DNA of 64,000 nucleotides from Bugula neritina (GCA_964035545.1 OZ037772.1:7300889-7364888), one strand, 5' to 3'; counted from the stretch's first letter, positions 23,322 to 61,588 are shown. Notes: generated by a model from the sequence alone, not told the origin. A program made the numbers and translations.

Positions 23322-23337
23322 GTTAATATCATTTTGG

Positions 23338-30730: not shown

Positions 30731-30790
<60 letters not shown>

Positions 30791-34290: not shown

Positions 34291-37200
34291 TCAGAAAGCT
34301 GACTGAGAACTAGGCTTAAATATGTCAATGAAGATCTGTCGACTGTTTCTATCAACAGTATAACATAAGTTAGCATATTGTGTAAATCTGGACGTATCTC
34401 TCATTATTCCAGCTACATCTGTGAGTAAATCAAGTAGGTTTACTCTCATTACCGGCTTTTCTTTTCTGCTAGAAGACATAGAATTGCTGCTGTCTGATAA
34501 CACAGAATCATCTGTTGACATCTGTATGTCTGTTTGTTCTGTGATGTCATCAGAGGAGCTGGTAGCAGGTGTCAATAGTTTACTTCTGTAATCACTGGTC
34601 AGATCTCTCAGATGTTCTGACAGACACTTGAACATCAGTCCAGGCTTTGACCTGGTATAAAATGTAGAACATAAAAGTAATACGGAAATTTTGATTTTGT
34701 AATATTTTTGCATAGCCTATTCCATAATATTGAATTTTTTTTGGCTTGGGAAATACACCAATTATTACACTTGTAAAAACAGAGATAAAATTGGAAATAG
34801 GGCACCTTATAAAAACGTCAAAAATACACATCAAATAACTTTAATTTTAATTAAACTAGTGTATTTGTAACGTAAAACACCATTACAATGTAGCGCAGCC
34901 TTTTGACCAAGATTATGAAATTCTTTTTCCATACTTGCTGTCTGGTAGAGTAGAGAACATAATATAGCAGTCTACAGGAACTTCTAATGGTGGGAAAGCT
35001 GGTTGTCTGCTCCACTCCTGCCTTCTCAAAGTTTCATCCAAACCCCTCCTTACAGGTTGATACATAATTGTCACTTCATTCTCTGGCCATGGGAAATTAG
35101 AACTGGACTCAAAGCTGTGTGGAATTCTGTTGTACTGAGGGGGAATACCTCCTCGGCAAGCAGACAGAAATAGGAGCTACAAACAATAACCACATTATAC
35201 ATGTATTTCAATGTCTGAAGAACGCATGTATTTGTATATTCATGCAAACAAAGCAAACATACTATTTATATTTGTTGAACTATCAATATAACTATCTGTT
35301 TACTAACTGTTTTCAATTTTGGTCGGATAATTCCATTTCTGATTAATATTGTCAAATATTCTTAAATTAGATAGAAATCACAAGCTAAAAAGGCTGCATG
35401 TGTAAAAAATTACTTGACTAATCAAACCTTAGGAATATTCTGTACATTCCCTGTGTTGAATGAATCAACTACTTCCTGTACAGAACATAGTGATTGGTTA
35501 TCAGCTCCCATTATGTTTCTCTGATATCCATGAGAGAGGATAGTCAAAGCAGCCATTGAACCATGTCCTTCTGATCTGGAGAACTCAGATATAGAACTAA
35601 GCATTTCTTCTGCAGAGAGATCATACTTGACTTCTACCTGGTTTAGAGAAAGGTCAAGAGATTGAATCAACAAAAAAGAAAAATGATATTTGTTCTGTTC
35701 AGCATATCCTGTGCTGGTAAGTCATGAATTATTGAAACCATATTAATCAACACACTCCATGCATGAGAGTAGGAAATCATATTTGCAAAAATATACATTT
35801 AATAGTTTGGTAAAACCTATTATAACGATCCTTGGCGGTATGGAAAAGTTAACAGAGACAGATTGAAAATAGTAACTCCTCATTATAGAAGTCCGAAAAA
35901 ATTGGAATCATTTTGTTTGACTAAAAGTGTTTCTAGGAATCGGTTATGAATTTAACATTTGGGTAAATAACAAGCTCACTTATAAGCCTATTATCTTAGA
36001 TGTGCTTATCTGGTAGAATTGCAATCAAAAACATATTTATTACAAATCCCTACAGAATATATTTTTTTATTTTAATAAAGCTTACTTCAAAGCCAAAATA
36101 CTTTTTAAACACTTCAATACTCTTCTGGAGAGTGACTCTTCGAAACTTCAAGGGCTGATGTTCATACTGATTGCATAGAATCAGAGCTTTTCCTCTCCTC
36201 TCACAACATAGAGCCAGGTTGTTTTTGAGCTTCATTTCTTTAGGATCTGATTGATTCACTTCAGCATAAGAATTTCTTCTCATTTCACCGTTGTCAAATC
36301 TACTAGGTACACCATTATCTGGTCTACTCACTTCACTGTCTTCTGTCAGATACCAACCATCATCTCTGATGTATCTCTTGCTCAGAGTTGAGTTTACACC
36401 AACTTTCTGTACATCAGGATCACAGGTGAACACAGTGATCAGAGAATGTATAGACCCATGTTTCTCCATGTCCAGCATTGACTTTCTGAGCAAGACATTA
36501 AAATTTTGCATTAAAAGTAGAACATGTAATTTAATGTAGTAAAATATAGATCAATTTAAAAGTTAATTATATGTTTTTAGTGTTACCTTGCATATTCATC
36601 TGCATAGTACTTCACTGAAAGTATCAGGTAGTCAGGACCTGGTGGTATCAGATTTAGATCTGCTTCTTTCACAGAACTTCGTATCACTGCTATCTGTAAA
36701 CAGAACTCATGCATAACTTTGCACAACATAAAAACCTGATACACAGACAATACTATATAATTTATTTTTATACACAATTTCTCACTTAACAGCCTTAGAT
36801 ATTTTCCCTCAACTCCCAAAAAAAAAACAAACCTGAAGATAAATTACTTATTTGCTTTTTATTTTAATATAACTGTAGTCCAGCTGTAACTCAAACACAA
36901 AACAAAACAGAACATATAAAAAAACTTTTCCTGTGAAACAGTGACAAAGAAATGTACGCCACCTTGGGTTTACCACTATATATGGGTGAATCTACATCAT
37001 TGAGTTTTTCTTGTATAACCTCTTGCTTCAATTCTAAGGATTCTTCTAGACTACTCGCGTCAATGAAAATAATTTCACTGTCTTCTTCAACTTTCGACTA
37101 CAAACCGAAATAATCTGTAAATTATAATGGCGCCGAATGAACTGCATACACTTCATAGTAAATACCACTACAATTTTATATTTTTACATTCAGTTATACA

Positions 37201-40200
37201 TTCGAAAACAGTTTCTAGATTTGAAATAAAGTACTAAGTAATAAACCATATAATCACACAAATCGACATCCATAAATGAACTTACAAAAAGATGGCTTGA
37301 TGTAGGAAGATGTAAAGATTCTTTCTCATGGAGAGTTGGGGTGAACAAAGAGTGGGATAGCTTGAAAGCAGAGTCAAGCAAAGAGTATTCATTTAAACAA
37401 TACTTTAGTACTTTTAAAATTGTCTCATCATATCTATAATACTTTGAGTGCAATAAAGAAAATCCATTTGAAGAATATCGCAGCATGTCGAAACTTTCTG
37501 ATGATAATGAGACGTGTTTTGGAAAGGGATTAGTGTGATCAGCCAATCTGTATAGAAGAGTACTTGCAGATGTGTCGCACAGGACTTTTTGAATGTAGAA
37601 CTTCTCATCAAAATTTCTTCTGTGAATAATTGATAGGCAGTCGGTTAACTGTGTGTTGTTTACATTGATGATGTGTTGTCTCATTGGCAGGGGTAAATGC
37701 AGCATGAAGTCAGCAAACACTCGGGTGTTATACTTAGCAGCAACATAATGAATAGGTGTGTTACCATATACATCAGCATGCATCATATTTTCGATATTTG
37801 ATATGTAAAATGAGTATTCCTGAAGTACACTATACAGGTCCCCCAGAAAAGGTGACAGAGCTGCAAGGTGCCAAATGTTTTGGTGGCTGTTGTTTCGTTT
37901 TTGCAAAAGGGCAGCCATTGTATCTGAGCCACAATTCTGCTCAACACAGTTTAATAACATGTTTAGAGCACCGCTGTTTCCAAGGGAAATTATCGAAAGA
38001 ACTGGTGTGTGACCAAAGAGATCTTCATATGCTAGTAAATGCTCTAATGTATGGCTATTGAAAGATTTCATGATTATTTCAACAGATTCTTTATCATTAG
38101 CAAGATGCAATGCAGTTCGCCCATTGGCATCAACTGCAGCCAATAATCTAGTTGATCGGTAATTGGACAAATATTCTACTACAGACACCCGACGGAATGA
38201 AACAGCCATATGCAATGAAGTACGCATATTTTTGTTAGCAGCCAACAAAAAATTTTCCTGCTCAATCCTTGGAAAGGACTCAACGAGAGTCTCGGCTATC
38301 TTTCCAGTTTTAGCAAGATGTAATGCTGTGCACCCCTCAACATCTCTTTGTAGTATGAATCCATCAAACATTGAGCTGAAACTGCAGAGATATTCTACTA
38401 CATCTGTTAGACCACTGCCGGCAGCCAGATGCAAAGCTGTACGCTGATCATCATCAACAGATAGTATAAAATCTCTTCGTTTTTCAGGTGCAACTGATTC
38501 TACAAGTAGCTGAGCAATTTCCTTAGTTTTAGCAATGTGAAGAGCTGTCCAACCATCACTATCAGATCTTAGCAGTAGTTGGTCACTAGCTGAATGGCAA
38601 AGCAGTTTCACCACATCCATTCTTGAAGAAAGAGCTGCTAAATGTAAAGCTGTGCATTGATGTTCATCGGCAAGCACAATGAGATCATGCCTTTTACATG
38701 GCGAAAGTGACTCGATTAATAATTTTGCAATGTCTCTGTTTTCAGCATAGTGAAGAGCTGTTCTACCAAAGCAGTCCTCCTTTGTTAATAAACTATCGAG
38801 ATCAATATTTAGGCTGCTGAAGTACTTAATTACGTCAATTTTACCTGAAATTGCAGCAGTATGTAAAGCTGTGAACTCATTTTCATCAGTAAGAAGCACA
38901 AAAGATTCTTGTTTCTCAGGTGGGAGGCTTTTCACAATAAGTTCTGCTATCATTCTGCTTTGTGCAAGATGGAGAGCAGTTCTACCTTCATTATCCACTT
39001 TTAGTATCAACTCATCACTACTTGGATACACACTACAGAGGTATTCTACTACACCAATCCTGTTTCCTTTAGCAGCTGTATGTAGTGCTGTACACTGGCT
39101 CTCAGTAACAGAAAATATCAAACTTCTCCTTTCAGTCGGTGTAACTGACTCCACAAGTAGTTTGGCTATTTCTTTATTTCCTGCATAATGTAGGGCTGTG
39201 CTACTATTGCTATCTTTCTTTAGTATCAGTTCATCATCAGCTAGAGACAAACTACAGAGATATTCTACTACATCAGCTCTACCATTTTCTGCAGCTAAAT
39301 GCAATGCTGTACATTGATCGTTATCAACAGATAATATAAGATCTCTTTGTATTTCTGGTCTCACCGAGTTAACAAGTAATTTAGTTATCACTTTCTTTTC
39401 AGCACAGTGCAAAACTGTTCTACCATGACTATCTTTTTTCAGAAGAAGCTGACCGTCATTTGAATATAGACTGCAGAGATATTGTACTACATCAGTTCTA
39501 CCTAACAGAACCATTACATGCATAGCTGTACGCTGACTCTTATCAACAAACAACAAGAATTCTATCAGACGTTCAGGAGTAACAGACTCAACAAGGATTT
39601 TTGCAATTTGTTCATTATGAACGCAGTATAGAGGTGTCCAGCCACCACTGTCTGATTTCAGAATCAACTCTTCACTGCCTTCAGATAGATTGCATAAGTA
39701 TTCCACCACATCCACTCTATTTTTATGTGCAGCTCTATGCAATGCTGTGCGTTGCTTTTTATCAACCGACAATGCCAAGTATTTCTGGCTTTCAGGTCTT
39801 ACTGACTCTATCAGTAGTTTTGCTATATCTTTGTTTTTAGCATAATGTAAAGCTGTATCACCATCTCTATCTTTTTTCAGTAGCAAATCACCATCAGACA
39901 AGCTACAGAGATATTCTACTACATCTGTTCTACCACTTTCAGCAGCTGCATGTAATGCTGTGCAGTGATTCCTATCAACAGATAATATAAAAGCTTTCTG
40001 GTTCTCTGGTAGAACTGTTTCTAAAAGTAGCTTGGCAACTTCTCTATTTTCAGCATAGTGTAAGGGTGTCCAACCTTTAGCATCTTTCTTTAAAATCAGT
40101 TCATCATCTGTTATAGACAAGCTACAGAGATATTTTACTACATCTGTTCTACCATTGGCAGCAGCTATATGTAACGCTGTGAGCTTATCTTTGGTAACTA

Positions 40201-40504
40201 ATAGTATAAAATCTCTCTGTTTCTCAGGTACTACTGACTCCACCAGTAATTGAGCAATCTTCTGATTTGTTGAAAAATGAAGAGCTGTCTCGCCTTTGTT
40301 ATCTTTTGCCAATATCAGTTCATCTTTTAATGGCAAACTACAGAAGTATTCCACTACATCTGTTTTACCATTGGCAGCAGCTTCATGTAGTGCTGTGGAC
40401 TGATTCTCATCAACTAATAGTATCAAATTTTCCCGTTCGTCTAAAGTAACTGACTCTATTAGTTGTTTTGCTGTCTCCTTATCTTTAACATAATGCAAGT
40501 TCAT
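34291..40504 (-). CDS. Ankyrin-repeat / pseudo-caspase / caspase protein A (~1557 aa)
   Basis: Exons 40504-37286 (~26 ANK repeats), 37097-36963, 36693-36587, 36485-36086 (RGKALILCN), 35637-35428 (ILSHG), 35176-34935 (LFLSACRG...VPVDCYIMFSTLPD), 34651-34291. All GT-AG, frame continuous to TGA. An upstream exon is not excluded. Confidence 0.9.
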
Positions 40505-43637: not shown

Positions 43638-46600
43638 ATGGATAAAAATCTTGGTGGAACACCTCTACACTATGCTGAAAATAGAGATAGAGCAAAACTA
43701 CTCGTAGAGTCAGTTACAGCAGAAAAACAGAGAGAATTTATACTATCTGTAGATAAGTATCAGTGTACAGCACTACATAGGGCTGTCGTTAACAATAGAA
43801 TTGATGTAGTAAAATATTTCTGTAGTTTATATCCAACTTCTGATGAACTAATACCAAAGAAAGGTAAAAATGGTTGGACTGCTCTTCACTATGCCAACAA
43901 TGTAGAGATTGCAAAGTTACTTGTGGAGTCGTTGGCACCAGAGAATCAAAAGCAGTTTATATTATCTGTTGATGATAGTGAGCAGACAGCACTGCACGTT
44001 GCCATCTCTGTTGGTGAGGCTGATGTGATCAAATATTTGTGTGAGGTACGCCAAAATAATGATGAGCTGCTATTCAAAAAAGACAGTTTTGGTTACACTC
44101 CTCTTCATATAGCTAAAGCCGATACAATAGCGGAGACACTTTTACAGTCAGTTACGCCAGAATTGAGAAAGAAATTTCTGTTCTCTGTAAGTAATAATCA
44201 ATGCACAGCATTGCATGAAGCAGCCATCTTTGGTAGAACCAAGGTTGTCAAATATTTGTGTAGTTTACCTCTAACTGATGATGAGTTTATAATGAAAAGA
44301 GAAGAGGAAGGCAAAACAGCTTTGCACTTGGCAAAAAACAGAGAAATTGCGCAACTGCTTGTTGAGTCAGTTTCAACAAAGAAACGAAACAGCTTAGTTT
44401 TATCCGTTGATGAAGAGGGCATGACTGCATTGCATGCGGCATCTGTACTAGGAGCAGCTGATGTAATAGAATATCTTTGTGGTATATCTTTAGAAAACGA
44501 TCAGTTACTGTTGAAAAAAACATTTACTGGCTGCACGGCTTTACATGTTGCATATGATGAAACTGCTATCACCAGTCTTCTCCATTCAAGCAACCATAAT
44601 TGTATAAAAAGGTTACTGTTGGACAGAGATGATGAAGGTAACACGCCACTTCTCTCATTAGTCAGATTTGGCAAAGACGACGCCCTGAAATCGCTTCTTC
44701 AGCATATAGAGCAAAGTTATGGTTTAGGCACTTTGGTTTCCTCTTTACATAGGCGGAACAAAAAGAAGCAAAATATTTTGCACCTTGCGGCTTTGTCACC
44801 AACCTTGAGAGAATTGTATAGTGTACTGGAAGAGTATTTACCAGACATAAATATTAAAAATATGATGTACCCAGATGTATACGGTAACACACCAATTCAC
44901 TATATCGCTGCCAAGTATGACACCAGAGCCTGTGCAGACTTTATGCAGTATGTTCCCTTATCAATGAGACACATTATTGTAAATTCAACAAACAAACAGC
45001 AAACCAACTGTAGAAACATTGTTCAACGGAAAGCATTTGACGAAAAGTTTTACATCCAGGGAGTGCTTTGTGATGATTCTGAAAAATCTTTACTGTCCAA
45101 ATTTTCCAATGTTCGGCAGTTCTTTTTTAATGAGTTCCAGCAACAGCTGGACCTGATTGTGCCTGAAAATGCCTATAAATATAATGAAGTGTTTTTCAAA
45201 GTGGTCAAATATTCTTTAAATGAATATTCATTGCTAGACTCTGCTTATACAACGTCACACACATTGTTTTCTTCAGCTGCTGATGCACAAAAATCCCTTT
45301 TGCTTTTTTTGTCAACAAATACGCAACCTGAAAACATCGTAAGTGGGCTCATGCTGGCTATGTAATTGACTGTATCAGCATAATAAATTGCAATTTTACT
45401 TTGTTTGCTTCAACAATTGTGAGAAAAACTTTAGCTGTCAGTAAAAGCAGATTGTGTTGGTGCTGCAGCAGTTTTATTAATGACCAGAAGTGCAAGCTAT
45501 CAATTTGATTAAAATTGTCAAAACTTTTAAATTTAGTTTCTATCTTTGTAATAATCTATGATGATGAGAGGTTTATCTGCATTCTAGACTTGTTTGATTG
45601 TAGGGCAAATGAAATTTTAATTCTATCCATTGTCTGATATTAACAATTAGGACCTTTTTTAAATTAGAACCTATATTATGACCTTGAGTATCGTTTAAAA
45701 CAATAGTATTCTTTTAGCAGAAGTCAGCAGAAGACTATCTACTTATAGCCATAGACATGGAAGACGTGGAAAAACCTAAACAAGAAACTGTGCAACAAAC
45801 ACTCAATGAAATGGACTTGGCTACATTCAACAGCAAACCCAAGGTCTTATTCTTATATCTATACTACCTATATACCTGTCAGCTGTATCATTGCATGAAA
45901 TCCCAATGTGTCGAAGGTAAACGATAGTTGATTCAGTCCTAAGTCACTATAGCTATGTATATATTGTGGTAGAAATACGTACATTGTGGAGTTGTCTTTT
46001 CTTATGTTTTTATTGTGTGGAATTACCTTCTGCTAATCTCATTTTTTACAACTTATGAAACACAATCATGTAATTCCATCCTGTCCGAAAGTCGGATTGC
46101 TGATTATCGGGCTACTGATAATCGAACCAAGTTCCAATTATCAGACTTTCGATTATCGGAGAGCCGATATTCGGGCCCCCCCCCGACTTTCGGACAGAAT
46201 GAGAACAAAGGATTCTTTGTCTACTTTTATTTTGTTTTGTAAACCATTTCTCTATCTTATTTCAGTATAAAAGCATGCGAGCTCACAGTGTAGATTCAGT
46301 CTATTATACTGGAGCTCTCCTGATACAGACTACCTATTAAATAATCTACTACACAATAAAGATTGATACTCTTGGCGATTACAACACCTGTTGTTATTTT
46401 CATATTAGAGTTATGTTTCACACTTAATTACATTCAACCCAAAAGTTAAAACATTGGTAGGGGACCTATTGAGGGTTTAGAAGAACAAGATGGCCAAAGG
46501 GGAGGAAGAGGACCAGCCCCAGAAGAGCCAGCAGGACCAGGCCATGAAGAGCCAGCAGGACCAGTCCCTGAAGTGCCGGCGGGACCAGCCCTTACGTTGG

Positions 46601-49600
46601 AAGCTCTGGTGACAGCCCTCCGAGAAGTCCAAGAGGCTAAAGATGTGCCACCTGGTGACAGGTACCGCTTCAAGCCCCCAAATTTCAGAGGGGACAGCGA
46701 TGTGGAGCAGCTTATCTGCGAGTTTGAGGATGTGGCCACCATCACTGAATAGCCAGCACCGGTGCGCGTCCTCCAACTCTGGGCTTGTTTAACAGGCCAG
46801 GCCAGGAGCTTTGCTCTCGAGCCTGATAAAGCCTACATAATGCGGGCTCTCCAAACTCGTTTGGGGTTGACAGCCCAAGAAGCCGTGGACAAGCTACAAG
46901 GGCTCCGAAGGGATTGGAGGACAACCCTAGAAGACCATGCAAACTCGATTGAGAGGCTGGCCCAGACTGCTTTCAGTCAGGCTGAAGAAGAGAAGAGACG
47001 CCTGTTATATAATGCATTCTTTCGAGCCATTAATAACCCAGAACTACAACGCTACTGGTTGGCGGCCAAGGTAAGTAGCATTGAGGAGGCCTTGGAGATA
47101 GGCAAGGCCTATTTTCAGGTTGATGGGCCCCATGGATCGGACTTTATCGCCCACGAGGTGGCCGAAGAGGAAAAGGAGACCACCACACTCCCTATCCTGC
47201 AGGTGGCGGCAGCAGCTACAAAGTCGCCAGAGCAAACGCAGCTCACCACATTGATGAACATGGTGAAAGGCCCGCAGGTTACGGTGACTGAGCTGCAACG
47301 TGACCAGGCCAACAGGCGGGCTTCCCAATCGTGGGACGACCCTGTATGCCCCTCACAACCCACCTGCTTGGGAATGTGGTCCGTCAAAACATATGAGAAA
47401 GCTTTGTCCCAGGGGAGGATGGCTGCCTTTAAACTACCGAGGCTCACGGTAACTTCCGCCAACCGTAGGCCCCAAGCCAAACCCATCCGGGAGAAGGATC
47501 AGAAGACAATCAGGAAGGCCTTTATGGAGTCTGCTGATACTGAGTGGCAGGAACATCAGAGACCTCGGAGACCGCAAGGTCTACCCGATTCTCCAGCTCG
47601 ACCACTTAGTACCCGGTTGGAGTCTCAGGGCGCAGGATGGCAGGCACCTCGGAGATCTCGGAGACCGCAAGGTCTACCCGAATTGGCTAGACTGTCGGAA
47701 AGAGCTTCTCGCGCAGTGTATCAACCCCTTCACGGAACCCGTCCGATTATCAGCTGGAATGCTTGCGGGGAAGTACCACTTCATCCAGGAAGCGGATGTG
47801 GGGCTGGTACTGAAGACAGTGGCTGACACTCAGGGAAAACCCCCTCCTGCCAGTTGAGGAGCAGTCTCAGCGCACTTGGCTGACCTGTATGAAGGAGCGT
47901 GTAGCAACTGAACGCCAAGTACTGGCTCAACTACTCATGGAGTACAGTGATGTTTTCAGTCACGGCGATGGAGACATGGGGCTGACTAAGGTTGTCTCCC
48001 ACGCGATATCCCTAGCAGCCAGTACCACCCCCATCAGGCAGCCAACCCGACCTCTAGGGCAGGAGAAGGAGGTGAGCCGACAGGTACAGGATCTTTTCGA
48101 CCAGGACCTGATTGAGCATGCCCATGGTGGGTGGAGCTCGCCAGTAGTTCTGGTCAAGAAAAAGGATGGTAGCTGGAGGTTCTGTGTGGACTACTGCAGA
48201 CTCAACAGTGTTACCATCCAGGATGCCTACCCTCTGCCATCCGGGCTTACTTTTGCCCAGGCAACTTTCCAGCGGCTCATGGAGCAGGTCATCAGTGGAT
48301 TACACTGGAAGACCCTCCTAAACTATCTGGACGACGTCATTGTTGACTCATGTCAGTCATCTGCGAGCAGTCTTTAACCATCTCCGAGAAGCTCGACTAA
48401 ATTTGAAGCTCTCCATGTGTGCACTCCTGCAGCCAGAAGTCACGTATCTAGGCCATGGGATTGGCGGTGACGGGGTCGCTACCGACCCAGAGAAGGAGCA
48501 AGCTGTGAAGGAATAGACTGTTCCCCGCAACCTCCCTGAGTTGCGGGCATTCCTGGGCCTGGTAGGGTACTACCAGCAGTACATACCTGGGTTTGCAGGG
48601 GTGGCTCAGCCCTTGAATCGACTAACCTCCAAGGGGGTCCGGTGGCAGTGGACACAGGAGGACCAGCAGGCATTCGACCACCTCAAACAACGACTAATGG
48701 AGGCGCCATTTTGGCGTATCCTGATCCAGCCAAATAGTAGATCCTTGACACCAACACTTTGCTAATGTATTCTGCCTGTGTGGCAAATACTCACACCAAC
48801 GCAATTGTGAGTTGCGTCACTAGCGCATAGCGCGTTGCCACACGGGCAGCACATTTGTGGACAACGAGGCCACATTTTCGGGGTTCCGGGATCTCATCTT
48901 GCCACACGTTGGTGACACTCGTAAACGAGCCTCTCTCACTCTGGGTTTCCCAGCCTCTTCGGGTCATGCTGACACGGGTCAGTGGGAATTCCAACTCCAA
49001 TGCTCACGACCTGGATCGCCAACCCGCAGCAACGAGCAAGAAGAAGAAGACGGAGCGCCGTTCCACCACCACCACCACCCGGATCTCTCAGCCCACTCAA
49101 GAGCCCCTGCCATCAATGGAAGAGGAGGTGTGATGCCTGCGCCGGCAGATGCGGAGATATGAGGAGGATATGACGGCCCTACGGAGGCGGCTTAGCCACC
49201 TTGAGCATTCCAATGGCGGCCGACGTCACTGATGACAATTCCATTTCTTATGTATATGTGGTAGTGGGTGTGTGGTGTTTTCACATTTTTTTTCTGTGCG
49301 TGCAATTTATTTTACGTGTGTAGTTATTATTTTGTGTGTATTCCTACAGTTTTTTTTGGTTAGCTTCCCCTTTAGTTTTTTTGTGTGTTTAATGTATCGG
49401 AAAGTAGGCTTTCCGATAGGGGGTGTGTGTGGCAGAAATAGGTACATTGTGGAGTTGTCTTTTCTTATTTTTTTACCGTGTGAAATTACCTTTTTCTGAT
49501 CTCATTTTTTATAACTTATGTAACACAATCGTGTAATTTCATCTTGTCTGAAAGTCGAACGACTGATTATCGGGCTCCCGATAATCGAACCAAGTTCCGA

Positions 49601-52600
49601 TTATTGGAGAGCCACTATTTGGGCCCTCGACTTTTGGACAGAATAAAAATAAAAGATTCTTTGTCTACTTTTCTTTTGTTCTGTAAAAAATTTCTTTAAC
49701 CTATTTCGGTATAATAGCAAGTGAACTCACAGTGTAGATTTAGTCTACTACTGGAGCTCGCCTGATACAGACTACCTATTAAAGCATCCACTACACAATT
49801 AATATTGATAATCTTGGCGACTACAACACTTCTAGTTTTTCTCATACTAGAGTTATGTTCCACACTTAATTACATTCGACTCACAAGTTACTACAATATT
49901 TTATGCTTTGTTTAATGTAAAACTTCTAGATTTTTAAAATAACTCATAAAAATAACATTGAAGAGCAATTATCACGGTTGAGTTAGCAGTTGCATAAAAA
50001 TCAAGGTGTATTAGAATATTGCTAGGACATTTTTAAAACAATCGTAATTTATTTACTCTAGAAACTGAATAAATCTTAAAAAATTAATTATACTTGGCTA
50101 ACGTTATTTACCAAGACATTTATAATAGAAGAGGTATAAATACTTAATTGCAGTTTACTCATCTTATTAGAGAACTGGCAATGTGTTTTTACAAATTGCA
50201 TAAAATTACAATTCAGAGTGCCCAATCACATATAAAAACTCATGCAAGTTTATAGTCACCATCCCTGTGGGAACCCTAGATGAAAAAGGTAATTCTTGTT
50301 AAATCGGGCTTATAAAGATGAAGCACAGGAGCAATTGAGACTAGATGTGTTTCCTAACATCACTGATAGCTTTTTGTTGGGCTCAAACCCATGACTTCGT
50401 GTTTACTAGGCAAACACTCTAATCCCTAGACGACAACTGCTCCCTAGTGCCCAATCACATATAGCGACTTCAAAAAACAATACAAAAAATTAATAATGTA
50501 TTTTTTACCATGCCAATTAACAACTTGACACTTTTCAATTAAAAAGCGAAAATATTGTGTCATTTTTTACGCATAATTGTCATAATTTGTATTTACCAAT
50601 TATATATGTAAAACAGCTACTTGCAGGCAAGTTTTTATATAGAAATCAACTTTTTTCATTTGTATGTACAGCTTACAGTGACACTGAGATAGTACATAAA
50701 ATCTCTAAAAATTGTCCCACTGTTTAATTAAACTGGTGATTAAATTTTGCAGATAGCAGTGATACAGAGTTCTGTGAAAGAAGAGAATCTGAATTTACTA
50801 CCACCAGGTCCGGACTATCTGATACTTCTGATAAAACATGAAATTGATAATGACATTAAAAGGAGGTAAATTAAAGCAAAATGTATTTTGCATAACACCT
50901 TATTTTCAACTTTTTTTATCAGGTAGAATTATTGCTATATTATTATTTCTGTTGAAAGTCAATATTTAATGACATGTTAAATTATTTATGAAAAATAGTT
51001 ATTATCTACAGAACAACATTACCCGACATGAAAAGATGCAAATCATTTCATTCTCTGATCTCTGAGCTTACCTGTGATCCTGATGTACAGAAAGTGAGTG
51101 TAAACTCAACTCTGAACAAGAGATACATCAGAGATGATGATGGATTTCTGGTAGAAGATGGTGAAGAGAGAGGAACAGAAGATAGTGAAGAGAGAGAAAC
51201 AGAAGATGGTAAAGAAAGAGAAACAGATGATGGTAAAGAAAGAGAAACAGAAGATGGTGAAGAGAGAGAATCACAAGATGGTAAAGAGAGAGAAACAAAT
51301 AATGGACAAGAGAGAGAAGCAGATGATGGTAAAGAGAGAGAAACAGTTGATGATGAAGAGAGAGGAACAGATGGTGGTAAAGAGAGAGAAACAGAAGATG
51401 GTGAAAAGAGTAAACCACCTACTAATACATCAGAAAACTTCCTTCTTATTACCGGAGGCATCAGAGGCAAAGCTCTTATTATTTGCAACAATCTAACACT
51501 CTCGACTAAAGCAACTGAGCATGATAAGAAAATTTCTCAAAAGCGGATGAGAACTTTACCAATTGCCCAAAACATTCTAGCCAAGTACTTCGGACTTAGT
51601 GTAAGTATGGTTACCTTTATTGTTACATAGATCAGGTTGCATATGATTGCACACATGCACTAAAAATGAGGAAATTTTTTACTTTTCATCCAATTTCAAA
51701 GAGCATATATTGACTTGCTTATAAATGAAGGTAGTTAAAAATTTGTTGATATGCTTTTCATTGGTTCATTTTAAAGAAAAGCTAAAGCATAAATTTACCA
51801 CATATGGTTCCAGGCACCACATACATTAAAGAATCTGTCTAAGATTTTAGAAAGCTTTTCAGATACTGACTTGTAGGTGAAGCCAATGAAGCTTTCATTG
51901 CTAGGTATTTTATTAGCTTATTTAAAAAGTTCTCACTTTTATTATTGTGAAAAAATGAAACTGGTATTTGATCAACAGATCATTTCGTCTAATGTTATCT
52001 ATATATTCAAAAATAAAGCTGAAATTTGCATCATACCAATACCAATGAAAGGAAATTTTGCCAGCAACTTCTTTGCACTTTTTAATTAAATTAATTAAAA
52101 ATCCATAGATTGTCAAAGAGTGAATTTTTCTCATCCGAGGATCAGACAAAATTTCAAACTTGCAGTCAGAAATTATATTTTCCAGGTAGAAACAAAATGT
52201 GACATGTCTGCTGAGGAAATACTCAGTTCTGTATCAGAATTCTCAAGATCAAAAGGACATGGTTCAATGGCTGCTCTAGTTATCTTCTCTCATGGTAAAG
52301 ATGGACTGATTTATGGACATGATGGAAAGTCAAACTTCTCAGTACAGGAAGTGGTGGATAACTTCAACTCTGGACATGTTAGAGATATTCCGAAAGTAAG
52401 TTTAATTGCAGAGTTTCATTTGTTTAGTCTTAAAAAACATTTATTGAAGTAAAAATATAAAGATGATTGGTCTCATCTACCAAGTTGACTTGAAAACTTA
52501 TGATAGTCTGCCGAGATTTAAAAAAGCATCCAAAATATGTTTAGGTAATGTTCCTGTCCTGCTGCAGAGGAGATATTTCAGCCATATACAACAGGGCTCC

Positions 52601-53220
52601 TCATAGTTTTGAATCTAGCAATGAGTTTCCTGACATACCTTTCCTATATAGACCGGTGGGACAGGAACTGCCTCTTGCAGTCAAAGCTATAGAATGGGAA
52701 AGACAAGCTACAAAGCAAAGTCGTCCTCTTGATATTCCTGTAGACTGCTACGTCTGCTTTACAACTCTTCCAGACAGCAGGTAAAAATAGTATTCAAATC
52801 TTTGACTATCATCAGCACTTTCTAAAATGTCAAAACAAACAATTCTTATATCAAATTACTTATTAACAATATAATTTTATGTTTAGGTCAAAAGCCGGAA
52901 AGTTTTTCAAATACTTTTCTGAACATTTGTCCGAACTTACCAACAATAGTGCTCTCGACTCACCAACAGGCACAGACGTTGAGAGAGACACCATGTCTAG
53001 TTGCCCTTTACCAAATAGACAACTTCCACCAAATGTCTCTGTAGGACTTCCTGTTTCTCATCTATCTGTACAGAGAGTAGAACTAGTTGATCTGCTAACA
53101 GATGTAGCTGGAGTTCTGAGAGAGAAATTTCAATCTAAACAATGCTTTAACTTATGTTACTCTGTCAATAGAGAAAGCAAACAGGTGTTTATTGATCTCC
53201 TGCCTTTCCATATGCATTAA
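43638..53220 (+). CDS. Ankyrin-repeat / pseudo-caspase / caspase protein B (~1101 aa)
   Basis: Exons 43638-45338 (~12 ANK), 45721-45843, 50753-50865, 51012-51600 (acidic repeat, RGKALIICN), 52186-52395 (IFSHG), 52545-52780 (MFLSCCRG), 52887-53220. Intron phases match gene A. Intron 2 carries a Gypsy element. Start codon uncertain. Confidence 0.88.
45965..49895 (+). mobile_element. Decayed Ty3/Gypsy LTR retrotransposon in intron 2 of gene B
   Basis: LTRs 45965-46453 and 49428-49895 (TG...CA), ATAT target duplication (45961-45964 / 49896-49899), PBS-like TGGTAGGGGACC after the 5' LTR and a purine run before the 3' LTR. Gag-like frame with a stop; RT motifs [21 protein letters not shown] and YLDD; [10 protein letters not shown] connection region. 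Confidence 0.93.
46490..48765 (+). pseudogene. Gypsy gag-pol remnant
   Basis: In-frame stops and frameshifts; internal deletion in RT (DAYPLP joined to [13 protein letters not shown]); no recognisable protease or integrase. Confidence 0.85.
50233..50444 (-). mobile_element. SINE family 1
   Basis: Reverse-complement copy with 18-bp TSD agtgcccaatcacatata. Confidence 0.85.
51154..51410 (+). repeat. Coding 24-nt minisatellite encoding (EDGKERET)n linker in gene B
   Basis: About 10-11 copies of gaagatggtaaagagagagaaaca-like units; a shorter array is present in gene C (~57040-57140). Confidence 0.9.
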
Positions 53221-53439
53221 ATCTGCAGAAACAATAAACTCTGATATGGCTCAAGCAGTGATCTGCATCTATAAAGTATAAAGGCTGTTATATATACATA
53301 CTACTCACCAAAATAAAAGTATTATTGAAATCATAGTTTCTATTTTAGTTTTAAAAATGCAAGCTCTATAAACTTGTTTTTAAAACTTGAAGTGTCTGAT
53401 TCTTGAGTATAACACTAATTTGATGCTACAACATAAAAA

Positions 53440-53765: not shown

Positions 53766-54468
53766 ACACGACATGAACCATGACACTTTGCTTGGTATTG
53801 CTTTGTTCTTACTGGTTGAATTGTTGCTTCCTAATTCTTATTAATACCAGTGCAGCTAGTTGTTTGCATATTAAAAACAAATTGCTATTATAGTAAAACA
53901 TGCAGGTAAAAGTGTCCTAAACTCTAATTACCAAATAAAAGAAACTTGCAATAAAATATTGTACCAAATATTGATTGATAAACTGTGAGATTAATTGAGC
54001 TACATATTATTACAATAAATGTAATGATTAAACTTCTCATTAAACTGAATTAGCTTATTACGGCCAAATAATTTAGAAAAATCAAGCAATTTTACTTGCA
54101 CCAATTTTGCATGCACAGTTTTGCTATTACAGCAGCTCCAGTAATATGAAATATAATTATAGATATAATAATATGTTAAAAGATAATAGAATAATCACTA
54201 TAAATAATTATTCACTAAATAATGATAAATGAAAATAGCCGTTCTCATGATAAATAAATGCAATATGTGTGTGAAAAAGAAAATAGAAAATATAGTTCCA
54301 ATTAGAGGCATAACCAAGATGATTTTTAGTAAAGCAAAATAAGCTTGTCTATTGTGACAAAGGATTGCATGAACTGCAATTGTACTCCAGAGTTTCATAA
54401 ATGTATCAAAGCTTATATTACAATCAAAGAGCTACACAAATATATACTTTTGCAGTTAGGAAACAAAA

Positions 54469-57400
54469 TTATAATTTCCATTGAACTTTAGCCACGCATG
54501 GTAAGATATCAATGAAAATCTGCTTACTGTATCTATTCACTGAGTAGCATAAGTTAAAGTATTGTTTAGATTCAAATTTCTCTCTCATTACTCCAGCTAC
54601 ATCTGTTAGCAGATCAACTAGTTCTACTCTCTGTACAGATGGCTGAAGAACAGGAAATGCTACAGAGACATCTGGTGGTAGTTGCTGACTTGGGAGAGAG
54701 TCTTTAGACGTGGGACATCTTTCAACCTCTGGGACTGTTTGGAGCTGAGAGGCTTTACTGTTGGTGAGTTCAGAGAGATGTTCAGAAAAGTACTTGAAAA
54801 ACATTCCAGCTTTTGATCTAAAAATAAATGAAAACTACAGTAAGTAATTTGATACAAAATATATTTTTAAAATTTTGCAGACTTAAAGAACATAAGTAAA
54901 ATGTGCCAGGAAAGTATGATTGCAATCCAAATACATTGCTAGTTTAATTTTTGAAGCAAAAATACTGTGAAAATCATACCTTTTACATCTAGACCAAAAA
55001 CTTTAAGATGTAAAAGCATTTGCTGTACCCACATTTACCTGCTGTCTGGAAGAGTTGTAAAGCAGACGTAGCAGTCTACAGGAATATCAAGAGGAGGAAT
55101 TTGCTTTGTAGCTTGTCTTTCCCATTCTATAGTTTTGACTGCAAGAGGCAGTTCCTGTCTCACTGGTCTATACAGGAAAGGGATGTCTGGAAACTCATCG
55201 CTAGATTCAAAACTATGAGGAGCTCTGTTGTATATGGCTGAAATATCTCCTCTGCAGCAGGACAGGAATAGTAGCTGAAATCAGAATCTTTCGGCCTAAT
55301 ATTACAGCAACTTGAAAACAAAGTTACTACTAATCAACTATTTAATCAATTTGAAATATTAAAAAAAATTAAAATAAAGTAATTAACCAAACATGAGTTC
55401 GACAGTTTTGAATGCTTCTGGAACTTCTTTGGCATGTCTCAAGTTAAAGTTGCTCTGTATGACCAATAAACAAATTTTAAGTTCAATTGACAGAAATACA
55501 CCTAAATTTATTGCTAGAATTTTTCAACGTTGAAATCGAAGTGGAGAGAAGCTTTCTACTACCTTGGGGATACATGCAGTAGTCCCAGAGTTGAAGTGAT
55601 TCACCACTTCCTGTACTGAACAGTTTGATTTTCCATCATGTCCATAAATGAGTCCATCTTTACCATGAGAGAAGATAGCTAAAGCAGCCATTGAACCATG
55701 TCCTTCTGATTTGGAGAACTCAGATATGGAACTGAGCATTTTTTCTGCAGATAGATCTTGTTTTTCAATAGTCTGTAATATATATAATATATTGGACTAG
55801 CCCTGTGCTATTATCTAAGTTATAACTAGGTTTTGCATCCACTCATGAATAAAGTTGTTGGGTGATTTGTGTTTAACTCTAATGCCCAATTGAAGCATTT
55901 CCATTATAGAATATTTGTTTTGAATAATTTATTAGTGTAGCAAACGACTTTTCTATGCATTACCTGTTTTGGTGTCTTATAACAAGTCATGCATATACTA
56001 ACGAATTTACTATAAGACAATATAGGAAATGATCTAATGTAAGCATTTTGCAAGTTGGCTGCTTTTTATTCAATAACACAGCAAAGAATTAGCTCATATG
56101 TTCATTTGGATTTTGCAAACACAAAACCTTTCCAAGCATTTGAAATATTTTCTTCAACCTAGACTTGGCAAACACTAGCTATAAAACAGAGTCAAAATCC
56201 TTTAATTACCATAAGGTTTTGAGCACATAGAAAAAATAGTTGCATATACTTACCTGAAATCCAAAGTGGTGAGCAAAAACCTTTCTGGAATGTTTCAAAG
56301 ATTGAGTGCGTCTCCCAGAAATTGTTTTACTTCCACTTGTTGGGTTATTAGAGAGTTGTATGTTGTTGCAAAGGATCAACGCCTTTCCTCTGTTACTTTC
56401 ATTTATGAGAATACGGCAATTTGGTGTACCAGTGGTGGCGGAATCATCCATCTTACCATCAACATGGCTATTTACTTCGAAATCAGAGAATTGACTTGTT
56501 TCACCAACACATGGCTGACTCCATTTGCTAGCCCCAGATTGAGTTACTGACTCATTATCTGATATCATCTCCTCACAATTATTTGCACTATGAGGAGGTC
56601 CTTCATTTACGAAAAAGCTTTGCACATCTGGATTATTAGTGAGCTCAGAAGTCAGTTGTTTAACTGATTTGTATTGTCCCATGTTGATCATTCTTTTTCT
56701 GTATATACAATATTGAATAACAACCATCATTAGCTCTTGCCACAAAATTAGTGCACACAAAATGTTTCGTTTTGAAATGGATTTAAAAGATAATAATAAT
56801 AATACTTCACCTTTTATAATCTTCATTCTTGTACTTGATTGAAACTTTGACATAATCTGAGCTTGAAAGTGCAGAACTTGAACTTTGCTCCATTAAGCAG
56901 CTCTGTAAGTTTGTGTAAATACATGTTTATTAGACACTTTGTGTAAATTGGATGTATTTACTTGTTTAATGTAGCATAGTTGCTTATAAAATTTCCATTG
57001 TATCTACATCATTTGATCCACTCACTTTTTCCTCGTTCAGTTTATTCTCTTCCCCATCTGTTTCTCTCTCTTCAACATCATCTGTTTCTCTCATTTTACC
57101 ATTTTCTGTTTCTCTCTCTTCACCATCACCTGTTTCTCTTATTTGAGTGTTACCTGGTTCAATATTTTCATAACCTTCTACCAAAGACGTATCATTATCT
57201 CTGATGTATCTCTTGCTCAGAGTTGAGTTTACACTAACTTTCTGTACATCAGGATCACAGCTCAGCTCAGAGATCAAAGAATGAATAGATTTGTGTTTCA
57301 GTAAGTCTGGTGCTGCATTCCTATGCAAAATAGTTAAAAAATTTATTTTAATATAATATAACATGTATAATGCAATGTAGCAAAACGTAGAAATTTTTTT

Positions 57401-60400
57401 CTATTTTAGTGTTACCTTGTATAGTTGTCTTTTTTGTATTTCACTGAGAGTATCAGGTAGTCAGGACCTGGTGGTATCAGATTCAGATCTGCTTCTTTCA
57501 CAGAACTTTGTATTACTGCTATCTTAAAAAACAGAGGCAAATGAAATATTACGTTTTCCATATATTTCTAGACTATTTGGCCATTTCATATAGTACAAAG
57601 TTCATTCTCAATAAATTAAAATACAACTATCAAGCAAAATAACGATGTATATAAATATAATTTAAATTTTAATATGTCAATAAAAGACATGAATTTGTTT
57701 TAAAAGCCATACTAAGGCAGTAAGCTATTTGTTGTTAGGTTTATTTGGCACATTCAATTAGCAATACTGAAATACTATTATAGTTGATACTATAATATAT
57801 ACATGTAGTTGATTAAAGACACTTTAATTTATACTATAAGTACCTTAGGCTTTCCATCGTGCACAGATATGTTCATTTCATTGAGTACACTCTGTATGGT
57901 TTTCTGCTTAGGTTCTTCCACATTGATTGTGTCTATGACTATAAGCTGCAAGTCTTCAGCTGAACCCTGAAACCAAACTAGTTTAGTACACAACATGATT
58001 ATCAGACTATATAGCTAAACGATTTTGTGATTATCAACACCAGATGTCACATTTGATATTAAATATCAATTTTAATAATTTGTTGAATGCTTTTTGAAAT
58101 GAACGATGTAATTTGCACAATAAGGGCATCAAAACTGTCGCTTTTACTAAAAATCAGTCAATATCCCCTCGGAAACTTTCTGACAGTTTTTACCTCCAGA
58201 TGGAGCAGGGCTAAATATGAGCACCACATATATGATGTTTGACTTTTCTAAAACTACACTTCCCAATGCTCATATCATAACTATATGTTTAACAACCAAT
58301 GCAAACGCAATTTTCTGGTGCTTCAACAATACAGAAAGCCTTAATTGTAAAAATATAGAAACGTTATTCAGGATGGTTAATCTAGCTACCCAAACAGAAA
58401 AAAGCAAAAATAGGTGAGAAAAGGTAACAAATTTGGAATAGTCATTGTAAGGTATAATTAGAAAATTATGTCATAAACGTGATAATATACACATGTTAGT
58501 TTATAACAGAGAATGCTTTTTATTATGTACCTAAAAGTATAGGCTTGAGTGCGGCACCTGAAGAATTAAATACCCTGTATAACTAGATAAGTTGGTTATA
58601 GCAAGGTGTATTGATGTTTTTTGAAATACATGTGTGTAGTAAATACATTAGGTAATGAGAAGCATTGGAGCACAAAGGTAATTAATATCAACTGCTTTCC
58701 TTCATTATATATAACAAGGAAAATTTAACCTATATACGCAACTACTAAAGAGTTTATTATTATACACATCAAGATACTTTAGGTGAGGGCATTACATAAT
58801 TAGCATCAACTACATAATTAGCTCTAACTATCATTGCTTATATAAAGACTCTATGGCAATAAGAAATATATTATATACACACTCTTCAACAAGAAGTCAG
58901 TGTATAAATTTGAACTAAATTAGAGATAATAAGCGTTTATACTAATGCAGATAGAATACTTCTGTGAGGAAGGAAATTAAGTCATATTGCAATAAATACT
59001 TCATACCCTTCAAATCGACCAAATGATACTTTTAGCTGCATAAAATGTGCATAATCATATAATCAGTTGAGAAAAACATTTTGCATTACATTTACTTGTA
59101 CCATGGCAGTATCGTGGCTATGTAAATATATGCTTTAAATGGCTAGCTATAGGGATATCTGATAAGAGAACATATAACATAATTATTATCTACAATAACT
59201 GATTATAACTACTAACTAGAGATATAAGATATAAAAAAACATATAATATGAGTAAGATTTAACAGATCAACTCACTGTGTTCTCTTGTCCAGATTTCTGT
59301 TGGCATACAGCTGCTAAAGACAAGCTGTGCGACGTTGTGTATGCAGAGTCAAGTAAGGAATATTCATTCAGACAGTATTTCAGCACCTTGAGAATTGTCT
59401 CATCATATTTATAGAAACTCTTTGGATGTGTCAACTGCTGCTCGAAGTCTGTTCTGAGAATGTATTCAGCTGCAAACTTTGTAGCCAAGGAACTATGCTT
59501 GTCATCTGCTAATACCTTTTTAATGTAAAACAATTCAGAAAAGTTTTTCTGGTGAATTATTTTTCTGCAGTCAACTAGTTGTGAATTATGTGAATCTGTA
59601 ATTTTTTGTCTCATTGTTAAGGAAAGATGGAGCATGAAGTCAGCAAAGACCTTAGTGTCATACTTAGCAGCAACATAATGGATTGGGGTGTTACCATACA
59701 CATCAGGGTACATCATTTTCTCAAGCTTTAAACATCCGACATAGTCTTGCAGTGCATTATATATACTGTCTAAAAACAATGACAGAGCTGCAAGATGCAA
59801 AATATTTTGACCAGCATAGTTGTGTTGCTCTAGATAAGTTATTATATCCAAGTCAGTTTTATTTTCAATATGTTGAAGAAGTTCTGCTAGTGATTCATGT
59901 TGTCCAAATTCAACAAGTGACAGAATAGGAGTGCTACCTTTGGTATTGGTGACAAAAAGCAGTTCATCTATTTGTGCAGATTTTAGTTCACTCAGCATGC
60001 AACTGACAATCTTTTTGTTGGTAGCATAGTGCAGTGCTGTGTGGTTAAAGCAATCTAGCCAAAACGTAAGAGAAACAGATAACTGAGACAAGCCACAGAG
60101 ATATTCTGCTACATCTGTTCTACCACTTATAGTAGCTGTATGTAGTGCGGTATGCTGATTCTCATCAGCACACAATATAAAAGTTTTGTGATTCTCTGGT
60201 AAAACTGACTCTACAAGTAACTTTGCAATTTCTCTATTCTCAGCATAGTGTAGAGCTGTCCTACCATCAGCATATTTCTTTAGTATCAGTTCATCATCAG
60301 CTAGAGACAAGCTACAGAAATATTCTACTACATCTGTTCTATCACATAAAGCAGCTGTATGTAGTGCTGTACACTGAGTCTCATCAGCACACAATATAAA

Positions 60401-61588
60401 AGTTTTCTGATTCTCTGGTAGAACTGACTCTACAAGTAACTTTGCAATTTCTCTATTCTCAGCATAGTGTAGAGCTGTCCTACCTTTAGTAGCTTTCTTT
60501 AGTATCAGTTCATTATCTGCTAGAGACAAGCTGCAGAGATATTCCACTACATCTGTTCTACCACACATAACAGCTATATGTAATGCTGTACACTGAGTCT
60601 TATCAGCACACAATATAAAAGTTTTCTGATTCTCTGGTAGAACTGACTCTAAAAGTAACTTTGCAATTTCTCTATTCTTAGCATAGTGTAGAGCTGTCCT
60701 ACCATTAGCATCTTGCTTTAGTATCAGTTCATCATCAGCTAGAGACAAGTTACAGAGATATTCTACTACATCTGTTCTATCACTATAAGTAGCTGTATGT
60801 AGTGCTGTACACTGATTCTTATCAGCACACAATATAAAAGTTTTCTGATTCTCTGGTAGAACTGACTCCACGAGCAATTTTGCAATTTCTCTATTTTTAG
60901 CTGCATAGTGTAGAGCTGTCCAACCATCAGCATCCTTCTTTAGTATCAGTTCATCATCAGCTAGAGACAAGTTACAGAGATATTCTACTACATCTGTTCT
61001 ATCACATAAAGCAGCTGTATGTAGTGCTGTACACTGAGTCTTATCAGCACACAATATAAAAGTTTTCTGATTCTCTGGTAGAACTGACTCCACGAGCAAT
61101 TTTGCAATTTCTCTATTTTTAGCATAGTGTAGAGCTGTACGACCATCAGCATCCTTCTTTAGTATCAGTTCATCATCAGCTAGAGACAAGCTACAGAGAT
61201 ATTCTACTACATCTGCTATACCACTATAAGTAGCTGTATGTAGTGCTGTACACTGAGTCTTATCAGCACACAATATAAAAGTTTTCTGATTCTCTGGTAG
61301 AACTGACTCCACGAGCAATTTTGCAATTTCTCTATTTTTAGCATAGTGTAGAGCTGTACGACCATCAGCATCCTTCTTTAGTATCAGTTCATCATCAGCT
61401 AGAGACAAGCTACAGAGATATTCTACTACATCTGCTCTACCACATGCAGCAGCTGTATGTAATGCTGTATATCCATTTTCATCAACAGATAGTATAAACT
61501 CCTTTTGCCTACATAAGTGAATTGAATCCACTAGTTGTCTCGCTTCATCCACATTGTCTATTGTGTGTAATGCTGTTTCACCAGACAT
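54469..61588 (-). CDS. Ankyrin-repeat / pseudo-caspase / caspase protein C (~1389 aa)
   Basis: Exons 61588-59276 (~18 ANK), 57966-57844, 57522-57416, 57320-57026, 56902-56811, 56698-56254 (RGKALILCN), 55772-55563 (IFSHG), 55274-55039 (LFLSCCRG), 54817-54469; frame continuous. An acceptor (tttgtag) directly precedes the ATG, so an upstream exon is likely (candidate donor at 62379). Confidence 0.87.
60075..61490 (-). repeat. Coding tandem repeat, 219-nt (73-aa, two-ankyrin) unit, ~6.5 near-identical copies
   Basis: Anchor (g/a)aactgactc recurs at 60202, 60421, 60640, 60859, 61081, 61300 (spacing 219, 219, 219, 222, 219). Confidence 0.95.

What the first reader, a model, noticed from the sequence alone, without database searches (positions are those of the whole stretch)
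34291..61588. Three-gene family of ankyrin-array caspases: candidate single-chain sensor-protease immune system
Seen: the three long ankyrin ORFs do not end where the ORF track stops. Each has a phase-0 GT donor (37285, 45339, 59275) that splices through 6-8 more exons into a caspase domain with intact SHG and S-A/C-CRG. Ankyrin copy number differs (~26, ~12, ~18). Known: metazoan initiator caspases normally carry CARD or DED prodomains and need a separate sensor and adaptor. Inference: here the ankyrin array is the sensor or auto-inhibitor fused directly to the effector, with paralogs covering different ligands. How widespread the architecture is needs a search.
Basis: partly seen in the sequence, partly recalled or inferred. 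Interest (0 to 1): 0.9.

Follow-up and report, generated by a model that had tools for sequence, protein, structure and literature searches.

The report
Bryozoan ankyrin, pseudo-caspase, caspase genes
Three neighbouring genes of the bryozoan Bugula neritina each join a long ankyrin-repeat array, a dead caspase-like domain and an intact caspase in one predicted protein; they belong to a family of at least 20 such genes that looks like a set of one-piece sensor-proteases for cell death or immunity, not yet tested.

Summary
The phase-0 GT donors (37285, 45339, 59275) lead through 6, 6 and 8 GT-AG, stop-free exons into a caspase with His-Gly and Cys-Arg-Gly (models of 1557, 1102, 1389 aa; about 25, 12, 18 ankyrin repeats). 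The genome is Bugula neritina. There are three corrections. (1) Between array and protease sits a degenerate caspase-fold domain without His or Cys (TM 0.63 to caspase-3, 0.60 to cFLIP; GKPK motif; shared phase-0 intron; dN/dS 0.2-0.45). (2) The family has at least 20 genes on seven chromosomes, with about 5 to over 60 repeats. (3) ANK caspases are already named in flatworms, and inactive-plus-active tandems in corals (caspase-X); I found no paper on the combination. Predicted binding-face positions of recently copied repeats change about three times faster than the framework and modestly faster than silent sites (1.37, CI 1.11-1.64). Gene 1 is a mosaic of an old front and a recently exchanged protease module. 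Splicing rests on conserved splice sites in 15 paralogs and on NCBI models. Function is inferred. The scan noted this family before on other DNA of this genome.

The parts
37286..40504 (-). Gene 1 exon 1: about 25 ankyrin repeats (alternating 36/37-aa units) plus a post-ANK segment that probably begins the pseudo-caspase
36963..37097 (-). Gene 1 exon 2: pseudo-caspase strand where His would be (no His), ends in GKPK at a phase-0 intron
36587..36693 (-). Gene 1 exon 3: pseudo-caspase strand where Cys would be (IAVIRSS, no Cys) and PGPDY strand
36086..36485 (-). Gene 1 exon 4: end of pseudo-caspase, linker, start of the catalytic caspase (RGKALI strand)
35428..35637 (-). Gene 1 exon 5: catalytic His (SHG)
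34935..35176 (-). Gene 1 exon 6: catalytic Cys (SACRG), inter-subunit linker, start of small subunit
34291..34651 (-). Gene 1 exon 7: small subunit and stop codon
43638..45338 (+). Gene 2 exon 1: about 12 ankyrin repeats plus post-ANK segment
45718..45843 (+). Gene 2 exon 2: pseudo-caspase, ends in SKPK
45965..49895 (+). Decayed LTR retrotransposon inside gene 2 intron 2 (terminal repeats 84-88% identical, RT fragment); observed only
50753..50865 (+). Gene 2 exon 3: pseudo-caspase
51012..51600 (+). Gene 2 exon 4: end of pseudo-caspase, acidic repeat linker, start of catalytic caspase
52186..52395 (+). Gene 2 exon 5: catalytic His (SHG)
52545..52780 (+). Gene 2 exon 6: catalytic Cys (SCCRG)
52887..53220 (+). 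Gene 2 exon 7: small subunit and stop
59276..61588 (-). Gene 3 exon 1: about 18 ankyrin repeats, with recently duplicated 219-bp double units, plus post-ANK segment
57844..57966 (-). Gene 3 exon 2: pseudo-caspase, ends in GKPK
57416..57522 (-). Gene 3 exon 3: pseudo-caspase
57026..57320 (-). Gene 3 exon 4: end of pseudo-caspase and acidic linker
56811..56902 (-). Gene 3 exon 5: extra exon resembling the 3' part of exon 3 (a similar exon occurs in the C9 paralog)
56254..56698 (-). Gene 3 exon 6: second degenerate copy of the exon 4 start, linker, start of catalytic caspase
55563..55772 (-). Gene 3 exon 7: catalytic His (SHG)
55039..55274 (-). Gene 3 exon 8: catalytic Cys (SCCRG)
54469..54817 (-). 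Gene 3 exon 9: small subunit and stop

Best explanation
These are three intact members of a bryozoan family of cytosolic, single-chain zymogens built as ankyrin array / pseudo-caspase / acidic flexible linker / catalytic caspase. Shown or strongly supported: the exon structure, the intact His-Cys dyad, the caspase fold of the middle domain, and purifying selection on all non-ANK exons. Inferred: the pseudo-caspase packs on the catalytic domain of the same chain, as modelled for coral caspase-X and seen for cFLIP/caspase-8, and keeps it quiet. The ankyrin array, whose binding face diversifies by unit duplication and substitution, binds a variable protein ligand, probably non-self. Binding relieves the brake or clusters the chains so that catalytic domains dimerise, and the caspase cuts death or defence substrates without a separate adaptor. 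Recombination re-pairs sensor fronts with protease modules.
For: Exon models. All 20 related SHG exons in the genome have an ankyrin exon upstream on the same strand. Conserved splice dinucleotides. The NCBI model KAF6024967 from another colony's assembly uses the same junctions (AUGUSTUS with transcriptome hints, PMC7576161). Middle domain: ESM Atlas structure search of residues 100-280 gives TM 0.63 (161 residues) to caspase-3 and 0.60 to cFLIP, and 29 of 30 feature hits are Peptidase_C14. Caspases dominate the weak Foldseek list of my own model. The GKPK exon aligns flush with the SHG exon at the same phase-0 intron, hhalign E 0.008, 0 of 60 shuffles as high. dN/dS is 0.23-0.45 in every exon class. 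Binding-face pN/pS is 1.37 (CI 1.11-1.64) against 0.43 for the framework, and 2.4 in gene 3. Gene 1 catalytic exons group with a cluster about 200 kb away (82-98% aa to its closest member C8b, pS 0.14-0.31) while its post-ANK part does not (40-43%, pS about 0.8). Coral caspase-X is more cytotoxic once its inactive domain is removed (PMC4715348).
Against: My AlphaFold models are weak (pTM 0.43 and 0.40) and show no contact between the two caspase-fold domains. No PDB match to the pseudo-domain alone reached significance (best Foldseek E 0.07; VIA Z 4.9, below unrelated DegV folds at 5.3). Pfam, PDB-sequence and whole-domain hhalign tests do not detect it. The excess at the binding face is modest, the repeat pairs are not independent, and it is about neutral in two of four arrays (1.11, 1.15). 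Two short-array orthologue pairs between colonies show face pN below pS. The S1 pocket is altered (Gln before the catalytic motif replaced by Ser or Cys; loop before the small-subunit Arg about four residues short against canonical caspases recalled from memory), so activity and Asp specificity are unproven.
Confidence: 0.5

Rival explanations
1. Integrated bait or tripwire: the pseudo-caspase or the long acidic linker is a decoy for pathogen caspase inhibitors, modifying effectors or proteases. Attack on it frees the catalytic domain, and the ankyrin array is a scaffold or holds the zymogen shut.
For: The pseudo-domain keeps the canonical GKPK surface although the catalytic domain itself has drifted to xIPK. 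The linker varies widely in length and composition, and two genes duplicate part of the pseudo-domain. Bacterial effectors that target caspases exist (PMC9239266).
Against: A bait under attack would not explain why the array's binding face changes fastest. No pathogen effector is known for this host.
Confidence: 0.15
2. Non-immune targeting protease: the ankyrin array picks substrates or a location for a regulated caspase used in tissue turnover such as polypide regression or metamorphosis, and the pseudo-domain sets its activity.
For: Flatworm ANK caspases were proposed as apoptotic initiators (PMC11463336). Short-array members are conserved between colonies. Purifying selection acts throughout.
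Against: It does not predict 20 paralogs with 5 to over 60 repeats, recent unit duplication, face-biased change or module exchange.
Confidence: 0.2
3. The proteins are catalytically weak or inactive scaffolds or modulators of the genome's many other caspases, and the array turnover is mostly neutral repeat instability.
For: Altered S1 pocket and divergent small subunit (AlphaFold pLDDT under 50 there). Face pN/pS is close to 1 in the largest arrays. At least 179 caspase-domain matches in the genome.
Against: His-Gly and Cys-Arg-Gly are intact in all 18 loci examined. The Atlas model of the catalytic part matches caspases along its whole length, TM 0.59-0.63.
Confidence: 0.1
4. The ankyrin ORF and the caspase exons are separate transcripts, or mostly produce an ANK-only product ending at the in-frame stop in intron 1.
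For: Each ORF reads through the donor to a nearby stop. Public NCBI models are fragmentary and carry at most the last few repeats. No RNA was examined.
Against: 20 of 20 loci keep the linkage and orientation. Donors are in phase 0. The small intervening exons are conserved and under purifying selection. In the C6 paralog and in a foreign homolog the GKPK segment is in the same exon as the repeats.
Confidence: 0.05

Closest known systems
ANK caspases of parasitic platyhelminths and Alitta virens (PMC11463336)
   Same: Ankyrin pro-domain in place of CARD or DED, in front of a caspase domain, in a lophotrochozoan.
   Different: That survey covered no bryozoan. It describes a clade sister to DED caspases, and the passages I read mention no pseudo-caspase and no lineage expansion. 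Here there are at least 20 paralogs, arrays up to more than 60 repeats in one exon, and an extra dead caspase domain. No homolog search returned a named flatworm protein, so origin is probably independent (not tested by tree).
Coral caspase-X (Acropora; PMC4715348)
   Same: N-terminal inactive caspase domain lacking His and Cys, followed by an active domain in one chain; small paralog family.
   Different: No ankyrin array in caspase-X. Its pseudo-domain is readily recognised by domain searches, whereas this one is shortened and below Pfam detection. Reported as coral-restricted; convergence is likely.
cFLIP-L / caspase-8 heterodimer (established knowledge; structural hit)
   Same: A catalytically dead caspase fold paired with an active caspase.
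   Different: Two separate DED proteins recruited by FADD; here one chain, no DED, ankyrin front.
Repeat-array immune receptors such as fungal and plant NLRs with variable WD40, TPR, ANK or LRR sensors (established knowledge)
   Same: Repeat number variation, concerted evolution of units, faster change at ligand-contact positions, modular exchange of sensor and effector.
   Different: No nucleotide-binding (NACHT or NB-ARC) switch was found in these genes; the middle module is a pseudo-caspase.

Membership tests
Caspase (peptidase C14A) | Caspase fold with large and small subunit regions | tested here: met
   Pfam PF00656; Foldseek E 4e-9 to caspase-2; Atlas TM 0.59-0.63 over residues 385-690 of P0011
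Caspase (peptidase C14A) | His-Cys catalytic dyad (HG and CRG motifs) | tested here: met
   SHG and S-A/C-CRG in the three genes; intact in all 18 loci examined
Caspase (peptidase C14A) | Canonical S1 pocket (two Arg plus Gln of QACxG) giving Asp specificity | tested here: inconclusive
   An invariant Arg follows strand 1; Gln is replaced by Ser or Cys; the small-subunit Arg/Lys lies in a shortened loop. The comparison with canonical spacing is from memory.
Caspase (peptidase C14A) | Proteolytic activity | not testable with these tools
   needs biochemistry
Flatworm ANK caspases | Ankyrin pro-domain without CARD or DED | tested here: met
Flatworm ANK caspases | Caspase domain falls in the flatworm ANK clade sister to DED caspases | not tested
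   No flatworm sequence was retrieved; all named hits of the three homolog searches, apart from low-complexity matches to bacterial kinases, were Bugula neritina
Coral caspase-X type (inactive + active tandem) | First domain has a caspase fold but lacks His and Cys | tested here: met
   Atlas TM 0.60-0.63 and 29/30 feature hits; no His or Cys at the equivalent positions in 15 paralogs; own AlphaFold/Foldseek support only weak
Coral caspase-X type (inactive + active tandem) | Inactive domain pairs with and restrains the active domain | tested here: inconclusive
   Two-domain AlphaFold model pTM 0.40, no usable inter-domain information
Coral caspase-X type (inactive + active tandem) | Descent from the coral caspase-X clade | not tested
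   Profile search of the pseudo-domain over 1.84 billion proteins gave 48 hits; those I traced were B. neritina records or unnamed metagenome contigs
NLR-type (STAND) immune receptor | NACHT or NB-ARC NTPase domain | tested here: not met
   No such Pfam hit in the exons or models scanned; the spliced models leave no room for one

The most novel reading that the evidence does not exclude
A class of animal one-chain immune receptor in which a diversifying ankyrin array replaces both receptor and adaptor, a built-in dead caspase replaces cFLIP (or the NLR switch) as the brake, and a caspase with altered specificity is the effector. Sensor and effector modules are re-paired by recombination, and the family extends to other marine species, probably bryozoans.
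Probability: 0.3. Interest if true: 0.85.

Novelty: new variant of a known kind. Interest (0 to 1): 0.62.

Why it matters
Initiator caspases are normally switched on by death-fold adaptors on a separate platform. A family that carries its own variable binding surface and its own dead-caspase regulator gives a direct test of whether ligand sensing, inhibition and proteolysis can be done by one chain. It also offers a handle on how bryozoans, a colonial phylum absent from published caspase surveys, detect pathogens or non-self tissue. Both building principles are already known separately (flatworm ANK caspases, coral caspase-X), so the novelty is the combination, the scale of the expansion and the sign of sensor diversification.

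Tried and rejected
Logan contigs checked for spliced sequence were DNA with introns. Pfam, PDB-sequence and whole-domain hhalign did not detect the pseudo-domain. Other exon-to-exon profile comparisons (IAV, p10x, post-ANK) were not significant. The first selection test conditioned on low pS and inflated the ratio to about 1.9; it was redone on total distance, and the lower figures are the ones used. An upstream exon with a death-fold domain is judged unlikely because Met positions agree across paralogs, but an AG just before the ATG in genes 2 and 3 leaves a 5' exon possible. A GTPase reading of the middle domain is rejected (TM 0.44-0.46 against 0.60-0.63 for caspases). Literature searches found no bryozoan caspase study.

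Full report
Organism. The assembly has 216,009,554 bases in 321 contigs, with contig lengths of 35.64, 33.58, 32.42, 24.80 and 16.05 Mb. These match the published Bugula neritina assembly tzBugNeri2.1 (216.00 Mb, 320 scaffolds plus mitochondrion; PMC11480708). The named protein homologs are B. neritina gene models.

Observation. Exon boundaries were fixed by hand and checked by script. Gene 1 (minus, 40504-34291) has 7 exons and 1557 codons, gene 2 (plus, 43638-53220) has 7 exons and 1102, and gene 3 (minus, 61588-54469) has 9 exons and 1389. All introns are GT-AG, phases are consistent, and there is no internal stop. Ankyrin motifs number 25, 12 and 18, in alternating 36/37-residue units, all in one large first exon. 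SHG and S-A/C-CRG are intact. No exon has a transmembrane-like stretch. Gene 2 carries a decayed LTR retrotransposon in intron 2; I only observed it.

Is the splice real? The evidence is comparative. All 20 genomic matches to the SHG exon have an ankyrin exon upstream on the same strand: 18 were found with the post-ankyrin segment at 1.6-7.3 kb and two more divergent ones. The exon order is kept in the 15 other loci fetched. At six homologous boundaries in 15 loci, 88 of 89 positions carry GT or AG and one a GC donor. NCBI model KAF6024967 (P0011), predicted on an earlier assembly by AUGUSTUS with transcriptome hints (PMC7576161), runs from the last ankyrin repeat through the same junctions to the caspase end. 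It is a prediction, not a transcript. My own joined models were not searched or folded; searches went exon by exon, and folding used P0011.

What the finding left out: a dead caspase in the middle. The end of exon 1 plus exons 2-4 encode a segment with a GKPK motif followed by a phase-0 intron. The catalytic domain has a phase-0 intron after the equivalent xIPK, and both carry a phase-2 intron in an Arg/Lys codon after the next strand. Exon-level profile comparison aligns the GKPK exon flush with the end of the SHG exon (E 0.008; 0 of 60 shuffles as high). In the ESM Atlas, residues 100-280 of P0011 match caspase-3 at TM 0.63 over 161 residues and cFLIP at TM 0.60, and 29 of 30 feature hits are Peptidase_C14 clusters (the two searches count as one source, and features may be influenced by the rest of the chain). 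My AlphaFold model of the region gives a confident alpha/beta core. Its Foldseek list is led by procaspase-8 and filled with caspases, but none is significant (E 0.07), and VIA Z is only 4.9. No paralog has His or Cys at the catalytic positions. The domain looks shortened, with one helix rather than two in the small-subunit part; whether its first strand and helix lie at the end of exon 1 is suggested but not shown. These exons are under purifying selection like the catalytic ones (pooled dN/dS 0.23-0.45). I put the pseudo-caspase identity at about 0.85. Gene 3 and one paralog repeat part of this module.

The family. There are at least 20 genes on seven chromosomes. First-exon open frames run from 491 to 3025 codons, and motif counts from about 5 to 62. 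The catalytic dyad is intact in all 18 loci examined. This ankyrin type is almost confined to these genes; one further array at C1:1.714 Mb was not examined. A profile search of the pseudo-domain over 1.84 billion proteins gave 48 hits. Those traced are B. neritina records or unnamed metagenome contigs. One of the latter (P0030) is at most 40% identical to anything in this genome, yet has ankyrin repeats, the post-ankyrin segment and GKPK followed by GT in one exon, so the design exists in another species of unknown identity. The C6 paralog has the same single-exon arrangement.

Evolution of the sensor side. Among recently duplicated repeats within arrays (70 minimum-spanning-tree edges, nucleotide distance under 0.2), positions equivalent to the randomised binding face of designed ankyrin proteins have pN/pS 1.37 (bootstrap 1.11-1.64), against 0.43 for the framework. 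Per gene the ratio is 2.40 (gene 3), 1.58, 1.15 and 1.11. This is clear relaxation and modest, uneven evidence of positive selection: edges are not independent, and two short-array orthologue pairs between colonies show no excess. Gene 1 is mosaic. Its catalytic exons group with four genes about 200 kb away (support 94/89, 98/99, 100/100; pS 0.14-0.31), while its post-ankyrin part is excluded from that group (99/96; pS about 0.8). Because silent sites show the same contrast, this reflects recombination or gene conversion and not only selection. The direction of exchange was not tested.

Mechanism. Shown: architecture, dyad, constraint, repeat turnover, module exchange. Inferred: the pseudo-caspase folds against the catalytic domain across the flexible acidic linker and restrains it. 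This follows coral caspase-X, where deleting the inactive domain increased killing and a cFLIP/caspase-8-like pairing was modelled (PMC4715348). Ligand binding to the array would release or cluster the catalytic domains. My two-domain model (pTM 0.40) neither supports nor excludes this. The S1 pocket is non-canonical (Ser or Cys for Gln, shortened loop), so the cleavage preference is open. Rivals are a bait/tripwire role, a developmental targeting protease, inactive scaffolds, and separate transcripts.

Comparison with what is known. ANK caspases were described in parasitic flatworms and one annelid, in a survey without bryozoans (PMC11463336). Inactive-plus-active tandems were described in corals. 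The genes are caspases by fold and dyad. Membership of the flatworm or coral clades was not tested and looks unlikely, since no such sequence was retrieved. They are not NLRs, as there is no NTPase. I found no paper on the three-part combination or on bryozoan caspases. The scan's earlier AI notes, read after my reading was recorded, describe the same family at other loci of this genome, including the pseudo-caspase. They also mention other ANK-caspase clusters and a large LRR-Roc-COR-caspase family; those I did not test, although at least 179 caspase-domain matches fit a broad expansion.

Verdict. The feature is real, correctly located and richer than reported in one respect (pseudo-caspase, 20-gene family), but less new in another (ANK caspases are known). 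It is a new variant of a known kind, with untested function. Interest 0.62.

Noticed in passing
window 45965-49895: Decayed LTR retrotransposon (terminal repeats 84-88% identical, gag-like ORF 46762-47826, RT fragment) inserted in sense orientation in intron 2 of gene 2.
   Followed up: partly
window 11819-18387 versus 23316-27039: Two copies of a region at 68-78% identity with conserved short open stretches on the minus strand; probably another tandem gene pair of unknown identity.
   Followed up: partly
window 10996-11409 (-): 137-codon ORF that reads like the C-terminal part of a non-LTR retrotransposon reverse transcriptase (judged by eye).
   Followed up: no
window 1678-1905, 6641-6866, 13168-13241, 14035-14189, 19900-20119, 27417-27636, 30248-30455, 50221-50446: Dispersed repeat of about 210 bp, SINE-like, 70-95% identical between copies.
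   Followed up: no
window 30064-30163, 32263-32363, 41917-42039, 42976-43097, 53435-53766: Second dispersed repeat of about 100 bp with tRNA-like box motifs; ARAGORN finds no tRNA gene, so probably a tRNA-derived SINE.
   Followed up: partly
window 30700-30832; 6905-7579 versus 13361-14035: A 133-bp near-perfect palindrome (96%), and a 678-bp inverted duplication (85%).
   Followed up: no
G000:C1:1713737-1715644 (-): 872-codon array of the same ankyrin type with no post-ankyrin or SHG-exon match nearby; may be an ANK-only member or a different fusion.
   Followed up: no
G000 whole genome: At least 179 Peptidase_C14 matches, clustered on C1, C6 and C7: a very large caspase expansion.
   Followed up: no
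L047 (ENA metagenome contig), L048: Divergent homologs from another organism; L047 has ankyrin repeats and the GKPK segment in one exon.
   Followed up: partly
window 56254-56902 (-) and L029:4996-5442: Gene 3 and the C9 paralog share an extra exon pair that repeats the second half of the pseudo-caspase.
   Followed up: partly
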